Virus record (IMG/VR): IMGVR_UViG_3300027996_002186
Span: 124,001-188,000 of that record
Length of the DNA: 64,000 nt
Direction: 5' to 3' (one strand)
Below are positions 15,798 to 20,198 of the stretch, in pieces. The first letter of the stretch is position 1; each line of letters begins with the position of its first letter. A program made the translations under genes and the position numbers. The notes below the pieces were generated by a model, which saw nothing but the letters and a program-made list of their open reading frames with translations, was not told the DNA's origin and searched no databases.

Positions 15798-16187
15798 ATG
15801 ATTAAAAAGTATAATTATTTCTTTGAGTCTAAGAAGACTAAGTTCCCTAATATTAAGAAAGTTGAAGTAGAAGGATTCTTTATTCATATAGGTAGAGACT
15901 CCAAATCTAACGACCACTTAACATTTAACGTTGCTGATGATAAAGACATCTGGATGCACGCTAAGGGTGTTCCTGGGAGTCATGTTATTATAAGAGTTAG
16001 AGAAAACTTACCAACTCAAGAAATACTAAGATATGTTGCTGAATTAGCTAAAAAGAATAGTAAAGCTAGTAAAGAAGATAATGTAACTGTTGTTTATTGC
16101 CAAAGAAAATTTGTTAAGAAAGAAAGTGGTATGAATGAGGGTCAAGTAAGAGTTGATTATATCAATGCCTACGAAATCGTAGTTTGA
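15798..16187 (+). CDS. NFACT-R (DUF814-type) RNA-binding domain protein with CTS-like N-terminus
   Basis: IGRDSKSNDHLTF...DIWMHAKGVPGSHVII...VVYCQRKFVKK...GQV; N-terminus MIKKYNYFFES. Confidence 0.85.
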   Translation: MIKKYNYFFESKKTKFPNIKKVEVEGFFIHIGRDSKSNDHLTFNVADDKDIWMHAKGVPGSHVIIRVRENLPTQEILRYVAELAKKNSKASKEDNVTVVYCQRKFVKKESGMNEGQVRVDYINAYEIVV

Positions 16188-16224: not shown

Positions 16225-17580
16225 ATGGCAGGAGAAACTAAAAGAGTAAAATTTTCGGATAAATTACTAAAGATACTTAAAAGTATGGAGGATAATAATA
16301 GTTATCTAGCTTTTGAACTTCTTTGGATGAATGATCCAACTGCAAAATATCATAATGGCCTTAATATAACAAATGTTGATTGTGGTACAGATAAATCATC
16401 AGATTTTAATTTCACTGTTGTTATTGGTGGTAAGAAAAATATAATGAAAATTGGTAAATTCATTAGATATTACTTTTCTAATCTATTTAGTAGTGATGAG
16501 ATAACAAAATTTGCTCATGCTTTCAATAGAGTGAAGAATGGTGGTAAGGCTGAACAATCTGGTAAAAAAGTTGAAATACCTGAGTTTAGTTATAATCCAA
16601 AAGACCCTAGGTCTACATTCTTATCACTTGTTACAGAAACATACCCACACCCACATGAGGAGAAAGTTATGAAATACTTACCAAAAGACTTAGATAAAGA
16701 TGAATTTGGTAATTATTATAAAGTGATTCCTGGTGATGATACTACAATGTTTAGTTCTCACCTTGATACGGCTGATAGAAGTCCAGTTCCTACTAACCTA
16801 TTCACTAAAGAGGTAGATGGGGATGAGATAATCTATACTGATGGTAGTACAATATTAGGGGCTGATGATAAGTCTGGAGTTACTGTTATGATGTATATGA
16901 TGGTTCATAATATCCCAGGTATTTATTATTTCTTTATTGGTGAAGAAAGAGGTGGTATTGGTTCTAATCAATTAGCTGATGTTTATGATAAATTTGATTT
17001 CCTAAAAAATGTTAAGAAATGTATTTCTTTTGATAGAAGAAGAACAATTTCTGTTATAACACATCAAATGGGTGGTCGTTGTTGTTCTGATGCTTTTGGT
17101 ACAGGACTTTGTAAAGAGTACAATAAACAAGGACTTAACCTTTCATTGGATAATGGTGGCGTTTATACTGATTCTGCTTCATTTATGGATATTATTCCTG
17201 AGTGTACTAATTTATCTGTTGGTTATTTAAATGAACACACAGGTAGAGAAGAACAAAACATGACATTTTTAATACAGTTGTGTAAAACTTCTATTAATGT
17301 TGATTGGGCTGGATTACCAGTTGCTAGAAAAGTAGGTTTGAACCTTGATTTAGTGCAGAAGCACAAATCTTTAATTGATGTTATAAAAAATGCAGTATTT
17401 GAATTAGAGGTGAAGATGGTTGGGTTTGAGGATAAAATATATATAAGAATAGATTTAGATGATACTAATCTAGTAACTGTTTATGATACTTTGAATATTG
17501 TACAAAACTTACTTGATAAACATAAAGTAGATAGTATGTGTATTTTTACTGAAACATATCTTAAAATAGAATTAACATAA
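16225..17580 (+). CDS. M28/M20-family Zn peptidase-like protein with N-terminal extension (paralog 1)
   Basis: SHLDT, LGADDKSG, GEERGG, SFDRR, YTDSA, NLSVGYLNEH. Confidence 0.8.
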   Translation: MAGETKRVKFSDKLLKILKSMEDNNSYLAFELLWMNDPTAKYHNGLNITNVDCGTDKSSDFNFTVVIGGKKNIMKIGKFIRYYFSNLFSSDEITKFAHAFNRVKNGGKAEQSGKKVEIPEFSYNPKDPRSTFLSLVTETYPHPHEEKVMKYLPKDLDKDEFGNYYKVIPGDDTTMFSSHLDTADRSPVPTNLFTKEVDGDEIIYTDGSTILGADDKSGVTVMMYMMVHNIPGIYYFFIGEERGGIGSNQLADVYDKFDFLKNVKKCISFDRRRTISVITHQMGGRCCSDAFGTGLCKEYNKQGLNLSLDNGGVYTDSASFMDIIPECTNLSVGYLNEHTGREEQNMTFLIQLCKTSINVDWAGLPVARKVGLNLDLVQKHKSLIDVIKNAVFELEVKMVGFEDKIYIRIDLDDTNLVTVYDTLNIVQNLLDKHKVDSMCIFTETYLKIELT

Positions 17581-17581
17581 T

Positions 17582-18076
17582 ATGAAGAATATTAAGAATT
17601 ATAAGAAGTTCCTAGAAAAGGAAAATATAAGAGAGGATGAGAACTCATATCTTAATGATGATATTAACGATCCTTGGGGTGATCCAAGTGATAGATGGTC
17701 TGATCGGTCGGATTATGATGATGAGGGTTACCAGTATCTTAATGGTGGTGAGTCTAGATCTAGTGAGGATGATAATGATGATAGAGATGATGTTCAACAT
17801 TTACTTTACTTGTTAAGAACAATGTTTAAGAACAATGGTATTGAGGTTGAAATAGAACATAAGAACTTAGATATTATGATATATTGTGTTATGAATAGAA
17901 AGGAAAGATTAAAAGATGTTATTAATGTTTTAGATGTGGCTAATAAATTGAAGAAGGATGTATTACCACAATATGATTGTGAGTTTGAGATGTGGGAAAC
18001 TAGAAAAGGTAAACCAATGTTAACCTTTAACTTCTTTTATGATGAAGGTTTGAACGATGATCGTGTTCCATTTTAA
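17582..18076 (+). CDS. Acidic hypothetical protein with CTS-like N-terminus
   Basis: MKNIKNYKKFLE. Confidence 0.7.
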   Translation: MKNIKNYKKFLEKENIREDENSYLNDDINDPWGDPSDRWSDRSDYDDEGYQYLNGGESRSSEDDNDDRDDVQHLLYLLRTMFKNNGIEVEIEHKNLDIMIYCVMNRKERLKDVINVLDVANKLKKDVLPQYDCEFEMWETRKGKPMLTFNFFYDEGLNDDRVPF

Positions 18077-18077
18077 C

Positions 18078-18129
18078 TATAAACAATCCATTTTAACAAC
18101 TTTTAAATATTTTAGTATATTATATATAC
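18078..18129 (+). promoter_or_regulatory. tmRNA promoter with upstream AAACAATCCA box and TATATAC core
   Basis: tataaacaatcca is identical to 58921-58933; AATCCA lies 38 nt upstream of TATATAC. Confidence 0.6.
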
Positions 18130-18146
18130 ATTAATTACAAACACTT

Positions 18147-18526
18147 GGGGGTGTCATAGAATAGATTCGCAGAGTAAAGGTAGTTATGCAGGTATCGGAT
18201 TGTTAAATACCCGATTAATAAATTAAATAACAAAACAGTAAACGGAAACGTAACAGAAGTAGCAAGCAAAGAAGATTTAGTATTTGCTCTACAAAACAAC
18301 CTACTTAACGTAGGGGAGTTAGTTGAAGCTTAATAGAGGAAACTCTTGAAAATTTAACAACTGATTTACACAGTTAAAAAGGTAAGACCGTTATTTGATA
18401 ATTTTTAGAAGTCTTTTCAAAAAAATTATCTAGTTTGAAAGTTTAGAAAAACTTTCTAAGCCTGTAAATGAATAATTATTGTTAACTGAGGAAGACACGA
18501 TGGGCAGTACATCGTCATCTCCACAA
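18147..18526 (+). ncRNA. ssrA: tmRNA (one-piece); tag ORF 18244-18333 GNVTEVASKEDLVFALQNNLLNVGELVEA*
   Basis: 5' GGGGGTG pairs with CATCTCC-A (G3:U wobble); T-arm cgatg-GGCAGTA-catcg; about 380 nt; internal ORF after GTAAAC ending TAA TAG. Confidence 0.9.
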
Positions 18527-18529
18527 GAG

Positions 18530-18591
18530 CCGATTGAATACTTTCAATTGGATTTTTTAACCTCACTTCCTACATGGGAGTGAGGTTTTTT
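18530..18591 (+). terminator. Two tandem hairpins/terminators after tmRNA
   Basis: ccgattgaa/ttcaattgg and aacctcacttcc/gggagtgaggtt, each followed by a T-run. Confidence 0.8.
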
Positions 18592-18624
18592 AATGCTATA
18601 GAACTATGACGTATTGTTTTTGAT

Positions 18625-18651
18625 AAACTAATCTATTATTTTAAATATAAT
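18625..18651 (+). promoter_or_regulatory. Putative middle promoter AAAC-N17-TATAAT
   Basis: Directly upstream of NADAR. Confidence 0.55.
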
Positions 18652-18655
18652 AGTT

Positions 18656-19132
18656 ATGATTAATAAATTCGAAGGTCGCTGGAGATTTCTATCAAACTTC
18701 TATCCGTGTGTGGTAGAACACCAAGGTATATCATATCCATCAAATGAACATTATTATGTTGCTATGAAAGTGACGGATGAACAATTTATTAATGGTAGAT
18801 ATTATACCGCTGGTGATTTCAGAGAAATGATAGCGACAATACCAAGTGCTGCTATTGCTAAAAAGTTAGGACAGAAAATAAAGGTTCGTAAAGATTGGGA
18901 AGTTAAGAAGATTGAATTTATGAACTGGGGTGTTAGAGAAAAATTTAATAACAACTCAACTCTTCGAGAATTATTATTATCAACTGGTGACGATGAACTA
19001 ATCGAGGGTAATTTTCATAAAGATACTTTTTGGGGAGTTTGTAATGGAAAGGGTAAAAACCATCTTGGTAAAATTCTTATGGAAGTAAGAAGAGAGTTGA
19101 GAGGTGAGAAGAGAGTTGGTCTGTTTATTTGA
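18656..19132 (+). CDS. NADAR (YbiA-like) ADP-ribosylhydrolase family protein
   Basis: FLSNFYP, YPSNEHYYVAMK, AKKLG, W..KK..FM..GVREKF, LLSTG..ELIEG...DTFWG, GKNHLGKILMEVR. Confidence 0.9.
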   Translation: MINKFEGRWRFLSNFYPCVVEHQGISYPSNEHYYVAMKVTDEQFINGRYYTAGDFREMIATIPSAAIAKKLGQKIKVRKDWEVKKIEFMNWGVREKFNNNSTLRELLLSTGDDELIEGNFHKDTFWGVCNGKGKNHLGKILMEVRRELRGEKRVGLFI

Positions 19133-19143
19133 ATAAAAAAGGG

Positions 19144-19171
19144 AAACTTTTGATAAGATTGCTTCTATAAC
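19144..19171 (+). promoter_or_regulatory. Putative middle promoter AAAC-N18-TATAAC
   Basis: Upstream of the dam operon. Confidence 0.5.
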
Positions 19172-19226
19172 TAAAAGTAAGAAAAAATATAGAAAATAAT
19201 TTCTAAAAAATATAAAACCAATAAAA

Positions 19227-20198
19227 ATGTCTGTTATTAGCTATTTTGGTGGCAAGTCCTCAAAGGTCTTCCATCAGTTCATCAACACAAGAATACCAAA
19301 AGATGGTATCAAAACTTATGTAGAACCATTCTCAGGTGCAATGGGAACGTATATGGATGACCCAAATCTTAAATTCGATACAGTTGTTTATAATGATAAG
19401 AACCGCCACCAGGTGAACTTATATAAGTGTTGTCAAAATCCAACAGAAATGTTGATACATATAGATAATCTAAAGAGTGGTTTATTACACACAACAGAAA
19501 CGGATCCAATAAAAAATTGGGATTTTTATAAAGCTATTTATAAGACATTTCAAAAGAATGATTTCTTAGATGATATGGATTTTGAGATTGGGGATTATGA
19601 AAAAGCTGCTATGTATGCTTTCTTAATTACATCAGCTCATAATTCAGTTTATCCAAGAGGAGCAGGGTTTAATGGTTATAAGAAGAATAATGGCAAACTT
19701 AAAATAGAAGCACTTGTTAATAAACTAAAGAAGGGTAAGTACACAGAGAAATTGGAATCAATTACTGAGTTCTATAATATTGATTTTGAGGAATTGATAA
19801 ACAAATATGATTCAGTAGATACATTTCTTTACTTAGACCCACCTTACGCTAGATTTGACGAGGCTAAAGGAATGGATGATGCTAGGAGACTATTCTGGTA
19901 TGGATGTGATGATGAAGGTGTCTTTGGACCCGAATCACATAGAAGGTTATTAGAAATGCTTAAAAAGACTGATTGTAGATGGTCATTATCTTATTATTAC
20001 TTTCCTTTATTAGAAGAATTATTACCAAGAGACCAATATAACTGGGTTGAGAAAGAAGTATTTAGAAGTTCTGCTCATGGTGGTAACAATTCGGATAATA
20101 AAAAGGTACAAGCTAAAGGTGTTGAGATGCTTATTATGAATTATAATCCAGAAACGGGAGAAAAAATCACTAATAAGGATGTCGAATGTGAACTTTAA
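19227..20198 (+). CDS. dam: Dam-like (D12 class) DNA adenine methyltransferase
   Basis: YFGGKS, YVEPFSGA, YND, FLYLDPPY, EMLIMNY. Confidence 0.88.
   Translation: MSVISYFGGKSSKVFHQFINTRIPKDGIKTYVEPFSGAMGTYMDDPNLKFDTVVYNDKNRHQVNLYKCCQNPTEMLIHIDNLKSGLLHTTETDPIKNWDFYKAIYKTFQKNDFLDDMDFEIGDYEKAAMYAFLITSAHNSVYPRGAGFNGYKKNNGKLKIEALVNKLKKGKYTEKLESITEFYNIDFEELINKYDSVDTFLYLDPPYARFDEAKGMDDARRLFWYGCDDEGVFGPESHRRLLEMLKKTDCRWSLSYYYFPLLEELLPRDQYNWVEKEVFRSSAHGGNNSDNKKVQAKGVEMLIMNYNPETGEKITNKDVECEL

What the first reader, a model, noticed from the sequence alone, without database searches (positions are those of the whole stretch)
18147..18526. Phage tmRNA with a 29-codon tag ending VEA and a GGCAGUA T-loop
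Seen: Ala acceptor stem with G3:U wobble; T-loop GGCAGTA rather than TTCRAAT; encoded 3' end ACAA rather than ACCA; tag GNVTEVASKEDLVFALQNNLLNVGELVEA. Known: bacterial tags are mostly about 10 aa and end in AA for ClpXP, and the GGCRGUA T-loop is an alphaproteobacterial trait. Inference: the phage may rescue stalled ribosomes while redirecting or avoiding degradation of tagged products. The resume codon (18244) is inferred.
Basis: partly seen in the sequence, partly recalled or inferred. Interest (0 to 1): 0.6.

Follow-up and report, generated by a model that had tools for sequence, protein, structure and literature searches.

The report
Hidden tmRNA of marine megaphages
A giant marine phage carries its own expressed ribosome-rescue RNA (tmRNA), of an unusual kind that the standard gene finders miss, and its long tag lacks the usual "destroy me" ending.

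Summary
ARAGORN finds nothing. Rfam's tmRNA model gives 8.8 bits against a cut-off of 47. Homologues settle the matter. There are 14 distinct full-length copies (67-100% identical), from IMG/VR contigs of up to 483 kb and from two phage genomes of 634 and 642 kb. They keep a canonical one-piece tmRNA fold: 78 pairs, 94% of cells paired, and 30 pairs with changes on both sides. All keep G3:U, a T-loop of the GGCRGUR type, no encoded CCA, and an open tag frame of 27-29 codons ending in TAA. Rfam's resume codon aligns to 18244. The window is 100% identical to a 483-kb phage genome, which also encodes SmpB, a CCA-adding-type enzyme, two ClpP and a ClpC-like ATPase. Marine metatranscriptome contigs from three studies match the gene exactly and stop at its edges. 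The tmRNA identity is therefore strongly supported. The idea that the tag redirects or avoids proteolysis stays an inference. What favours it: no family member ends in AA, and the C-terminal half of the tag is its least conserved part. I rate it a new variant of a known kind.

The parts
18093..18129 (+). Promoter region. A sigma-70-like pair, TTAACA (18093-18098) and TATATT (18116-18121), overlaps the phage motif TTATATATAC (18120-18129). The motif ends 17 nt before the mature 5' end.
   Evidence: One search gives the best promoter-like site of the region (10/12); the motif occurs 6 times in the window against 0.98 expected, each time just upstream of a gene in the right orientation; 18 nt around it are identical to the sequence 31 nt upstream of the major capsid gene.
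18147..18526 (+). tmRNA gene, one-piece and not permuted. The mature RNA is predicted to run 18147-18523 plus an added CCA.
   Evidence: fold, covariation, full-length alignment to RF00023. RNA-library contigs cover 18155-18532, 18167-18524 and 18080-18468 with 0 differences.
18147..18153 (+). Acceptor stem, 5' strand, with G3 of the G3:U pair (alanine identity).
   Evidence: pairs 1-7 with 381-387 of alignment A2. Pair 3 is G:U in 14/14 copies. Pair 5 is A-U, G-C or G-U.
18166..18193 (+). Helix 2, 5' strand. It pairs with 18456-18496.
   Evidence: 21 pairs, 99% paired, 4 with changes on both sides.
18194..18232 (+). Pseudoknot 1. Stem 1 is 18194-18198 with 18211-18215. Stem 2 is 18201-18205 with 18228-18232.
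   Evidence: Stem 1 is invariant. In stem 2, 3 of 5 pairs change on both sides (for example U-A, C-G, A-U).
18244..18333 (+). Tag reading frame: resume codon GGA at 18244, 29 codons, stop TAA at 18331-18333, then TAG at 18334-18336.
   Evidence: the frame is open for 27-29 codons in 14/14 copies and always ends in TAA, while the other frames close within 2-20 codons; indels in the tag are only 3 or 6 nt, and third codon positions vary most (22/27 against 15-16/27); the Rfam resume codon aligns here.
18260..18291 (+). Hairpin inside the tag frame. The stem is 18260-18270 with 18283-18291. The 12-nt loop at 18271-18282 is nearly invariant and encodes EDLV.
   Evidence: 8 pairs, 94% paired, 5 with changes on both sides; 8 of 500 shuffles reach that; this is the best-conserved stretch of the tag region.
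18361..18385 (+). Pseudoknot 2. Stem 1 is 18361-18363 with 18371-18373. Stem 2 is 18366-18369 with 18382-18385.
   Evidence: Stem 2 is 100% paired, with 2 pairs changed on both sides; 1 of 500 shuffles reaches that.
18386..18430 (+). Pseudoknot 3. Stem 1 is 18386-18388 with 18411-18413. Stem 2 is 18397-18406 with 18421-18430.
   Evidence: Stem 2 has 10 pairs, 79% paired, 6 with changes on both sides. It is shorter and poorly aligned in the three most distant copies.
18437..18456 (+). Hairpin at the position of pseudoknot 4 (18437-18444 with 18449-18456). No second stem was established.
   Evidence: 6 pairs, 98% paired, 3 with changes on both sides.
18497..18515 (+). T arm: 6-bp stem and the 7-nt loop GGCAGTA (18503-18509).
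   Evidence: 4 of 6 stem pairs change on both sides. The family's loops are GGCAGTA, GGCGGTA, GGCAGTG, AGCAGTA and GGCAGA(A).
18516..18526 (+). Acceptor stem 3' strand (18516-18522), discriminator A (18523) and the CAA trailer in place of CCA.
   Evidence: the 3' end is CCACAA in 13 copies and CCACTA in one. None encodes CCA.
18530..18597 (+). Two tandem terminator-like hairpins with T runs (18530-18551 and 18559-18587).
   Evidence: 3 terminator-like sites in the region against 0.3 expected; the second hairpin is conserved in LR745206.

Best explanation
This is a functional one-piece tmRNA (ssrA) gene of a marine megaphage of about 483 kb.

Shown:
- A tRNA-like domain with the alanine identity pair G3:U, the long helix 2, pseudoknots 1-3, a terminal hairpin, and a tag frame of 27-29 codons are all kept through compensating changes in 14 distinct relatives.
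- The gene has its own promoter-like motif and terminators.
- The phage genome also encodes a canonical SmpB and a CCA-adding-type nucleotidyltransferase.
- RNA-library contigs cover the gene and not its neighbours.

Inferred mechanism:
1. The gene is transcribed from a promoter of the same type as the major capsid gene.
2. The precursor is trimmed (RNase P at 18147; the 3' trailer is removed and CCA added) and charged by the host AlaRS, since this phage has no AlaRS.
3. The RNA is bound by the phage SmpB and enters stalled ribosomes.
4. Translation resumes at GGA (18244) and adds Ala plus a 29-residue tag before the TAA stop frees the ribosome.

The benefit to the phage is most likely ribosome recycling during heavy late translation or after host-inflicted RNA damage.

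The fate of the tagged chains is open. The tag has no AA ending, so it is probably not a standard ClpX substrate. It may be a degron of a different kind, as in Mycoplasma, possibly for the phage's own ClpC-like/ClpP proteins.
For: - Fold and covariation.
- Tag frame. Resume codon.
- Same phage as a 98%-complete 483,262-bp record: 19.9 kb at 100% identity, with the tmRNA at 142,147.
- SmpB at E 1e-50 to 1e-54 in all four complete relatives tested (G001, G002, W01, W02), including that record, with the conserved C-terminal tail.
- A CCA-adding-type enzyme in the same four genomes.
- No other tmRNA candidate over the Rfam cut-off in five near-complete relatives, so this element is the only partner available for their SmpB.
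- Expression: 14 marine metatranscriptome runs from 7 studies hold about the tmRNA's share of the sampled words. Exact contigs from 3 studies are confined to the gene, with zero depth over 17600-18079 and 18600-19200.
- Promoter and terminators.
- No AlaRS in this phage.
Against: - Both standard detectors fail: ARAGORN and Rfam at 8.8 bits against a cut-off of 47.
- The T-loop lacks the U54, U55 and A58 equivalents, and the D-loop analogue lacks the usual GG, so the tRNA-like elbow is non-standard.
- No CCA is encoded, and no CCA-tailed RNA end was seen. Only contigs were available, and contigs cannot show ends.
- One RNA-library contig starts at 18080, upstream of the promoter motif. Read-through transcription or some DNA carry-over therefore cannot be excluded.
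- Aminoacylation, SmpB binding and tagging are untested.
- Non-synonymous differences outnumber synonymous ones in the tag (409 against 122). The peptide is only weakly constrained, and part of the conservation in the tag is at the RNA level.
Confidence: 0.85

Rival explanations
1. It is a working tmRNA and the long tag is simply an ordinary degron. Tagged chains are destroyed by host proteases that accept hydrophobic C-termini or hydrophobic stretches (Lon, FtsH, ClpAP, Tsp). Nothing is redirected or spared. Tag length and sequence reflect drift in an AT-rich genome.
For: All 14 tags end in A or V and are rich in L, V, I and M. The peptide is weakly constrained: 409 non-synonymous against 122 synonymous differences. 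Mycoplasma tags are long, end in AFA and are degraded by Lon (PMC3985003).
Against: Length (27-29 codons) and the central EDLV-x-AL part are kept across copies that are only 67% identical. No copy has drifted to the AA ending that all 33 sampled bacterial tags have.
Confidence: 0.4
2. It is a decoy. The RNA binds SmpB or ribosomes and blocks the host's trans-translation rather than tagging, like the TLD-only tmRNA-like gene of mycobacteriophage DS6A.
For: Phage TLD-only molecules are known, and a similar molecule inhibits tmRNA (PMC4131195, PMC11915505). The elbow of this tRNA-like domain is non-standard.
Against: The full tmRNA body, pseudoknot 1, the sequence before the resume codon and an in-frame tag with a conserved TAA stop are kept in all 14 copies. 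The phage also brings its own SmpB, which a decoy for host SmpB would not need.
Confidence: 0.05
3. It is not a tmRNA but another structured RNA, or a small protein gene that happens to be flanked by hairpins.
For: Sub-threshold scores in both dedicated detectors.
Against: RF00023 aligns end to end (positions 1-374) at exactly these coordinates. The 3' part matches alpha_tmRNA at E 0.009. Acceptor stem, T arm, helix 2 and pseudoknot 1 covary in the expected places. The frame has no start codon or ribosome-binding site at 18244. An SmpB gene is present with no other tmRNA in the genomes.
Confidence: 0.02
4. It is a decaying passenger: a tmRNA gene captured from a host long ago and no longer used.
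For: Very low Rfam score, low G+C (32%), an odd T-loop and no CCA.
Against: Purifying selection on the structure is evident across 14 diverged copies. The tag frame, its stop and G3:U are intact in all of them. The position downstream of the capsid gene cluster is conserved. Exact RNA contigs come from three independent studies.
Confidence: 0.03

Closest known systems
Standard one-piece bacterial tmRNA (Rfam RF00023; ssrA)
   Same: Gene order, size (380 nt) and architecture: acceptor stem with G3:U, T arm, helix 2, pseudoknot 1, a resume codon near nt 98 that begins with G, a stop codon, and downstream pseudoknots. It also needs SmpB.
   Different: It scores 8.8 bits, against 105-198 bits for 57 sampled Bacteroidota tmRNAs. 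The T-loop is GGCRGUR instead of UUCRANU (0 of 33 sampled). The D-loop analogue is longer and has no GG. The tag is 27-29 aa rather than 8-10 and never ends in AA. There is a covarying hairpin inside the tag frame. G+C is 32%.
Two-piece (permuted) alphaproteobacterial tmRNA (Rfam RF01849), also carried by marine pelagiphages and phage Melnitz (PMC9004378)
   Same: The T-loop of the alpha_tmRNA consensus is GGCgGUA, as here. The 3' piece of that model matches 18400-18532 at 15.5 bits, E 0.009, which is better than the standard model does there. Both occur in marine phages.
   Different: The gene here is not permuted. The 5' acceptor strand, tag, T arm and 3' acceptor strand lie in the standard order, and RNA contigs run through nearly the whole gene without a gap. 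The phage SmpB has no alphaproteobacterial affinity: its best matches, at 40-53% identity, are spread over many phyla. ARAGORN, which found the pelagiphage genes, does not find this one.
[quoted passage not shown]
   Same: A long tag of about 27 aa with a polar start and a hydrophobic end, without the ALAA ending recognised by ClpX and ClpA.
   Different: Mycoplasma lacks ClpXP and its tag ends in AFA. Here the phage encodes ClpP (two copies) and a ClpC-like ATPase but no Lon, and the C-terminus is variable. Sequence similarity of the tags was not tested.
tmRNA and SmpB genes reported in huge phages (Al-Shayeb et al. 2020, PMC7162821), Bacillus phage G and Bxz1-like mycobacteriophages (PMC4131195)
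   Same: Phage-encoded trans-translation components in very large phage genomes. Two relatives of this element lie in records of 634,780 and 642,428 bp, lengths that match two of the four largest genomes of that study.
   Different: That study assigned tmRNAs with ARAGORN, and ARAGORN finds none at these loci. Rfam finds none over its cut-off anywhere in those genomes. This family has probably gone unannotated, leaving their SmpB without a visible partner. I could not check the paper's supplementary tables for these two genomes.

Membership tests
tmRNA (ssrA), standard one-piece form | tRNA-like acceptor stem of 7 bp with the G3:U70 alanine identity pair and discriminator A | tested here: met
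   7/7 pairs. G:U at pair 3 in 14/14 copies. Pair 5 varies while staying paired. A follows the stem in all copies.
tmRNA (ssrA), standard one-piece form | T arm with a 7-nt loop of T-psi-C type (UUCRANU) | tested here: not met
   The stem is present and covaries (4 of 6 pairs). The loop is GGCAGUA or a close variant in all copies. All 33 sampled bacterial tmRNAs have TTC[GA]A[ACG]T. The same variant loop is the consensus of the accepted alphaproteobacterial tmRNA family, so it does not exclude tmRNA function.
tmRNA (ssrA), standard one-piece form | [quoted passage not shown] | tested here: met
   helix 2 has 21 pairs at 99% paired. Pseudoknot 1 stem 1 is invariant. Stem 2 has 3 of 5 compensating pairs.
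tmRNA (ssrA), standard one-piece form | Internal tag frame without a start codon, resumed near nt 90-100 and ending at a stop codon | tested here: met
   resume at nt 98, 27-29 codons, TAA in 14/14, in-frame indels only, and the Rfam resume codon aligns to 18244.
tmRNA (ssrA), standard one-piece form | Tag ending in a hydrophobic (A)LAA-type degron | tested here: not met
   the last two residues are EA, TA, TV, VA, AV or LV, and never AA. In the bacterial sample 33/33 end in AA.
tmRNA (ssrA), standard one-piece form | Downstream pseudoknots 2-4 (variable among bacteria) | tested here: inconclusive
   Pseudoknots 2 and 3 are supported by compensating changes. At the position of pseudoknot 4 only a hairpin was established.
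tmRNA (ssrA), standard one-piece form | Score over the curated thresholds of the dedicated detectors (Rfam gathering score; ARAGORN) | tested here: not met
tmRNA (ssrA), standard one-piece form | SmpB partner in the same genome | tested here: met
   a canonical 145-aa SmpB in the 483-kb genome that is identical to the window, and in three other relatives.
tmRNA (ssrA), standard one-piece form | Mature 3' CCA end, charging with alanine, tagging of stalled chains | not testable with these tools
   CCA is not encoded. A CCA-adding-type enzyme is encoded by the phage. Contigs cannot show RNA ends.
tmRNA (ssrA), standard one-piece form | Accumulates as a discrete stable RNA | tested here: met
   exact contigs in RNA libraries of three studies are confined to the gene while the flanking genes are silent. 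Caveat: these are contigs, not raw reads.
Two-piece alphaproteobacterial tmRNA (RF01849) | Circularly permuted gene, with the acceptor piece encoded upstream of the coding piece | tested here: not met
   the gene order is standard. Only the 3' piece of the model matches.
Two-piece alphaproteobacterial tmRNA (RF01849) | GGCRGUA T-loop | tested here: met

The most novel reading that the evidence does not exclude
These megaphages run a private trans-translation system. A tmRNA with a remodelled tRNA-like elbow (GGCRGUR T-loop and a D-loop analogue without GG) has co-evolved with the phage's own SmpB. It is switched on together with the capsid genes. It adds a long tag without the AA ending, whose conserved central part or embedded RNA hairpin, rather than its C-terminus, carries the signal. 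Tagged chains would then be kept away from host ClpXP and either spared or handed to the phage's own ClpC-like/ClpP machine.
Probability: 0.2. Interest if true: 0.8.

Novelty: new variant of a known kind. Interest (0 to 1): 0.6.

Why it matters
Phage tmRNAs are known but rare, and they are normally found with ARAGORN or Rfam. This is a whole family, in some of the largest phage genomes known, that both tools miss. The SmpB genes of those phages have therefore had no visible partner.

The family combines features normally seen apart: standard gene order, a T-loop otherwise typical of alphaproteobacterial and mitochondrial tmRNAs, a Mycoplasma-length tag without the ClpX ending, and a covarying hairpin inside the tag frame.

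It gives three things:
- a concrete sequence set for improving tmRNA models;
- a natural test of how much the T-loop/D-loop elbow and the tag C-terminus can change while trans-translation still works;
- a testable case of a virus bringing its own ribosome-rescue and protein-turnover kit (tmRNA, SmpB, a CCA-adding-type enzyme, ClpP, a ClpC-like ATPase and an RqcH-type NFACT-R protein).

Tried and rejected
- ARAGORN at default settings on the window and on 39 loci, and at thresholds down to -ps40: nothing found.
- As a diagnostic of the detector only, I swapped the T-loop for a canonical one, and the 3' end for CCA, in a scratch copy. ARAGORN still found nothing. The T-loop alone does not explain the miss.
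- Rfam at gathering thresholds: nothing. A weak 'L10 leader' match at 18437-18600 is an artefact of the terminator hairpin.
- A covariance model of the whole element was not built. At about 380 positions it exceeds the calibration limit stated for the tool. I used an nhmmer profile instead.
- I did the pair counts in a script rather than with the count of structure pairs, to avoid typing a 391-character structure string.
- 12 of the 37 IMG/VR loci holding the 16-mer seed are chance hits inside unrelated protein genes.
- A 22-base family motif has no match in 185,579 species-representative bacterial and archaeal genomes. No bacterial donor or host copy was found.
- The phage SmpB gives no clear donor: best matches are 40-53% identical and spread over many phyla.
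- No Lon, no ClpX equivalog and (in this phage) no AlaRS were found.
- No long-range partner was found for the invariant loop of the tag hairpin.
- Another genetic code was considered. Table 11 gives long ORFs throughout the window, so none was used.
The large protein searches were not needed and not used. Complex prediction was not used, because the tag is shorter than its 30-residue minimum and no binding claim is made.

Full report
**Observation.**
- A 7-bp acceptor stem (18147-18153 with 18516-18522) carries G3:U.
- The T arm has the 7-nt loop GGCAGTA (18503-18509).
- Discriminator A (18523) is followed by CAA rather than CCA.

The dedicated detectors do not support it on their own. ARAGORN finds nothing in the window, even at very relaxed thresholds. 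Rfam finds nothing at gathering thresholds. With permissive thresholds RF00023 aligns end to end (model 1-374) at exactly 18147-18526, but at only 8.8 bits against a cut-off of 47. On a narrower scan the 3' part matches the alphaproteobacterial model RF01849 at 15.5 bits, E 0.009.

**Relatives.** In the phage collection only two records match: uncultured phage genomes of 634,780 and 642,428 bp. In the more distant one the match is confined to the element itself. A 16-base seed from the element finds 37 IMG/VR loci.
- 25 of them are homologues, on contigs of up to 483 kb.
- The other 12 are chance hits in protein genes.
- This gives 14 distinct full-length copies, 67-100% identical to the window.
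- ARAGORN finds none of them.
- A 22-base family motif is absent from 185,579 species-representative bacterial and archaeal genomes.

**Structure.** RNAalifold on the 14 copies returns the tmRNA layout: acceptor stem, a long helix 2, the first stem of pseudoknot 1, and the T arm. 19 of its 57 pairs change on both sides. I added the crossing stems by hand: pseudoknot 1 stem 2, pseudoknots 2 and 3, and a terminal hairpin. The full model has 78 pairs.
- 94.2% of cells are paired and 30 pairs change on both sides.
- None of 500 column shuffles reaches either figure.
- Sliding the partners by 1-3 columns gives 39-47% paired and 5-10 such pairs.
- G3:U is kept in 14/14 copies. Pair 5 of the acceptor stem runs through G-U, A-U and G-C. 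Four of six T-stem pairs covary.
- The T-loop is GGCAGTA, GGCGGTA, GGCAGTG, AGCAGTA or GGCAGA(A). No copy encodes CCA.

**Tag.** The frame is open for 27-29 codons in all 14 copies and always ends in TAA. The other two frames close within 2-20 codons. Indels inside it are 3 or 6 nt only, while outside it they are 1, 2, 4, 5 or 10 nt. Third codon positions vary most.

The resume point is supported in three ways:
- The resume codon of the Rfam consensus aligns to 18244 at top posterior probability.
- It is nt 98 of the gene, against nt 94-101 in four bacterial tmRNAs.
- The preceding GTAAA is invariant, while single-base indels further upstream break any common longer frame.

Tags start GNV(T/N)EV, GKTNE(V/L) or DNVSEV. 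They share a central EDLV-x-AL and end in EA, TA, TV, VA, AV or LV. The C-terminal half is the least conserved part. This is the reverse of bacterial tags: in 33 sampled tmRNAs (Bacteroidota in the GTDB sense plus one Marinimicrobia) tags are 8-10 aa, all end in AA, and all T-loops are TTC[GA]A[ACG]T. Those genes score 105-198 bits on RF00023.

A hairpin lies inside the tag frame (18260-18291). Five of its eight pairs covary. Here amino-acid changes on one strand (SK, TR, TS) go with changes on the other (FA, AA) that keep the base pairing. Its 12-nt loop is nearly invariant. Part of the conservation in the tag is therefore at the RNA level.

**Genome context.**
- 19.9 kb of the window is 100% identical to a 483,262-bp IMG/VR record rated 98% complete. 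It is the same phage, with the tmRNA at position 142,147.
- That genome and three other complete relatives each encode a canonical SmpB (E 1e-50 to 1e-54, with the conserved basic C-terminal tail) and a CCA-adding-type nucleotidyltransferase.
- No other tmRNA candidate passes the Rfam cut-off anywhere in five near-complete relatives. This element is the only available partner for their SmpB.
- Al-Shayeb et al. 2020 reported tmRNA and SmpB in huge phages in general, but assigned tmRNAs with ARAGORN (PMC7162821). That program would have missed this family.
- The phage also encodes two full-length ClpP homologues and a two-module Hsp100 ATPase of ClpC type with a VGF loop. It has no Lon, no ClpX equivalog and no AlaRS.
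- The phage SmpB is only 40-53% identical to bacterial ones from many phyla, so no donor is evident.

**Local context**. Upstream lie a prohead-protease-like gene, a gp23-type major capsid gene, a stand-alone NFACT-R protein (like the C-terminal part of RqcH), an M20/M28/PepT-like peptidase and a 164-aa unknown. Downstream lie a NADAR protein and a Dam-type methylase. The order capsid gene, peptidase-like gene, small gene, tmRNA is kept in distant relatives. Table 11 gives long ORFs throughout, so no other genetic code is indicated.

**Expression signals.** A promoter-like site lies at 18093-18121 and two terminator hairpins at 18530-18587. The motif TTATATATAC (18120-18129) occurs six times in the window against about one expected, always just upstream of a gene. 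The 18 nt around it are identical upstream of the major capsid gene. I infer co-expression with late or structural genes.

**Expression evidence.** Fourteen marine metatranscriptome runs from seven studies hold 0.14-0.21 of the sampled words of 17600-19200. The tmRNA makes up 0.24 of that stretch. Laid on it, contigs from three studies match with no differences at 18080-18468, 18155-18532 and 18167-18524. A fourth run holds a relative. Depth is zero over both flanking genes in all four runs. That fits a discrete, abundant, unsplit RNA and a marine habitat. Two limits apply: contigs cannot show exact ends or CCA, and one contig begins upstream of the promoter motif.

**Interpretation.** I am confident (0.85) that this is a functional one-piece tmRNA working with the phage SmpB. 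The steps from processing to tagging are inferred from the established mechanism (PMC3985003).
- For it: there is no AA ending anywhere in the family, the C-terminus is variable, the central part is conserved, and the phage has its own Clp proteins.
- Against it: the tags are hydrophobic and end in A or V, there is the precedent of Mycoplasma's long Lon-dependent tag, and the peptide is under weak constraint.
- A decoy role, a non-tmRNA identity and a decaying passenger are each unlikely.

**Novelty.** Phage tmRNAs are known. Examples are Bacillus phage G and Bxz1-like mycobacteriophages (PMC4131195), the two-piece alphaproteobacterial-type genes of marine pelagiphages and Melnitz (PMC9004378), and huge phages (PMC7162821). 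This family is a new variant. It has the standard gene order with the alphaproteobacterial-type T-loop, a long tag without the AA ending, and an internal hairpin, and it is invisible to the usual tools.

Noticed in passing
window 15798-16187 (+): A 129-aa protein that consists only of an NFACT-R domain (Pfam PF05670, E 8e-16). It resembles the C-terminal part of RqcH/FbpA-type ribosome quality-control proteins (NCBIfam RqcH_arch, EfbA). It lies 2 kb upstream of the tmRNA and behind the same promoter motif. A same-sized ORF sits at the same place in LR745206. This is a second ribosome-rescue-type gene in the neighbourhood.
   Followed up: partly
window 16225-17580 (+): A 451-aa protein matching phrog_4191 'peptidase' (E 8e-63), with weak similarity to peptidase T and M20/M28 metallopeptidases. 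It is kept directly upstream of the tmRNA in distant relatives. A 400-nt part of it has 67-69% identical paralogous copies at several places in the 483-kb genome.
   Followed up: partly
window 18260-18291 (+): A covarying hairpin inside the tag reading frame, with a nearly invariant 12-nt loop (GAAGATTTAGTA). Paired codons change amino acid together so that base pairing is kept. No long-range partner for the loop was found.
   Followed up: partly
window 13953, 15785, 18120, 35856, 46794 (+) and 35081-35072 (-): The motif TTATATATAC occurs 6 times against about 1 expected, each time just upstream of a gene in the right orientation, including the major capsid gene and the tmRNA. It is probably a phage promoter element, possibly late. 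Its timing is not known.
   Followed up: partly
G002 (the 483-kb genome identical to the window): about 36.7 kb, 68.6 kb, 316-318 kb, 275.9 kb, 398.7 kb: Outside the window the same phage encodes two ClpP homologues, a ClpC-like double-AAA ATPase with a VGF loop, SmpB and a CCA-adding-type nucleotidyltransferase. Together these form a sizeable translation and proteostasis kit.
   Followed up: partly
window 18656-19132 (+) and 19227-20198 (+): A NADAR-domain protein (E 5e-28) and a D12-class adenine methyltransferase lie directly downstream of the tmRNA terminators.
   Followed up: no
window 18080-18146 (+): One RNA-library contig (run X1, adapters at both ends) begins at 18080. That is upstream of the promoter motif and 4 nt after the stop of the preceding ORF. 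It points to read-through transcription from the upstream gene or to some DNA carry-over.
   Followed up: no
LR745206.1 368019-368711: This 634-kb relative has a 292-aa ORF matching only parts of the AlaRS catalytic domain. The window's own phage has none.
   Followed up: no
loci L007, L009, L022, L030, L034, L038: The 16-base seed also hits a conserved protein-coding motif in unrelated IMG/VR phage contigs. The shared flanks suggest one protein family. It is unrelated to the tmRNA.
   Followed up: no
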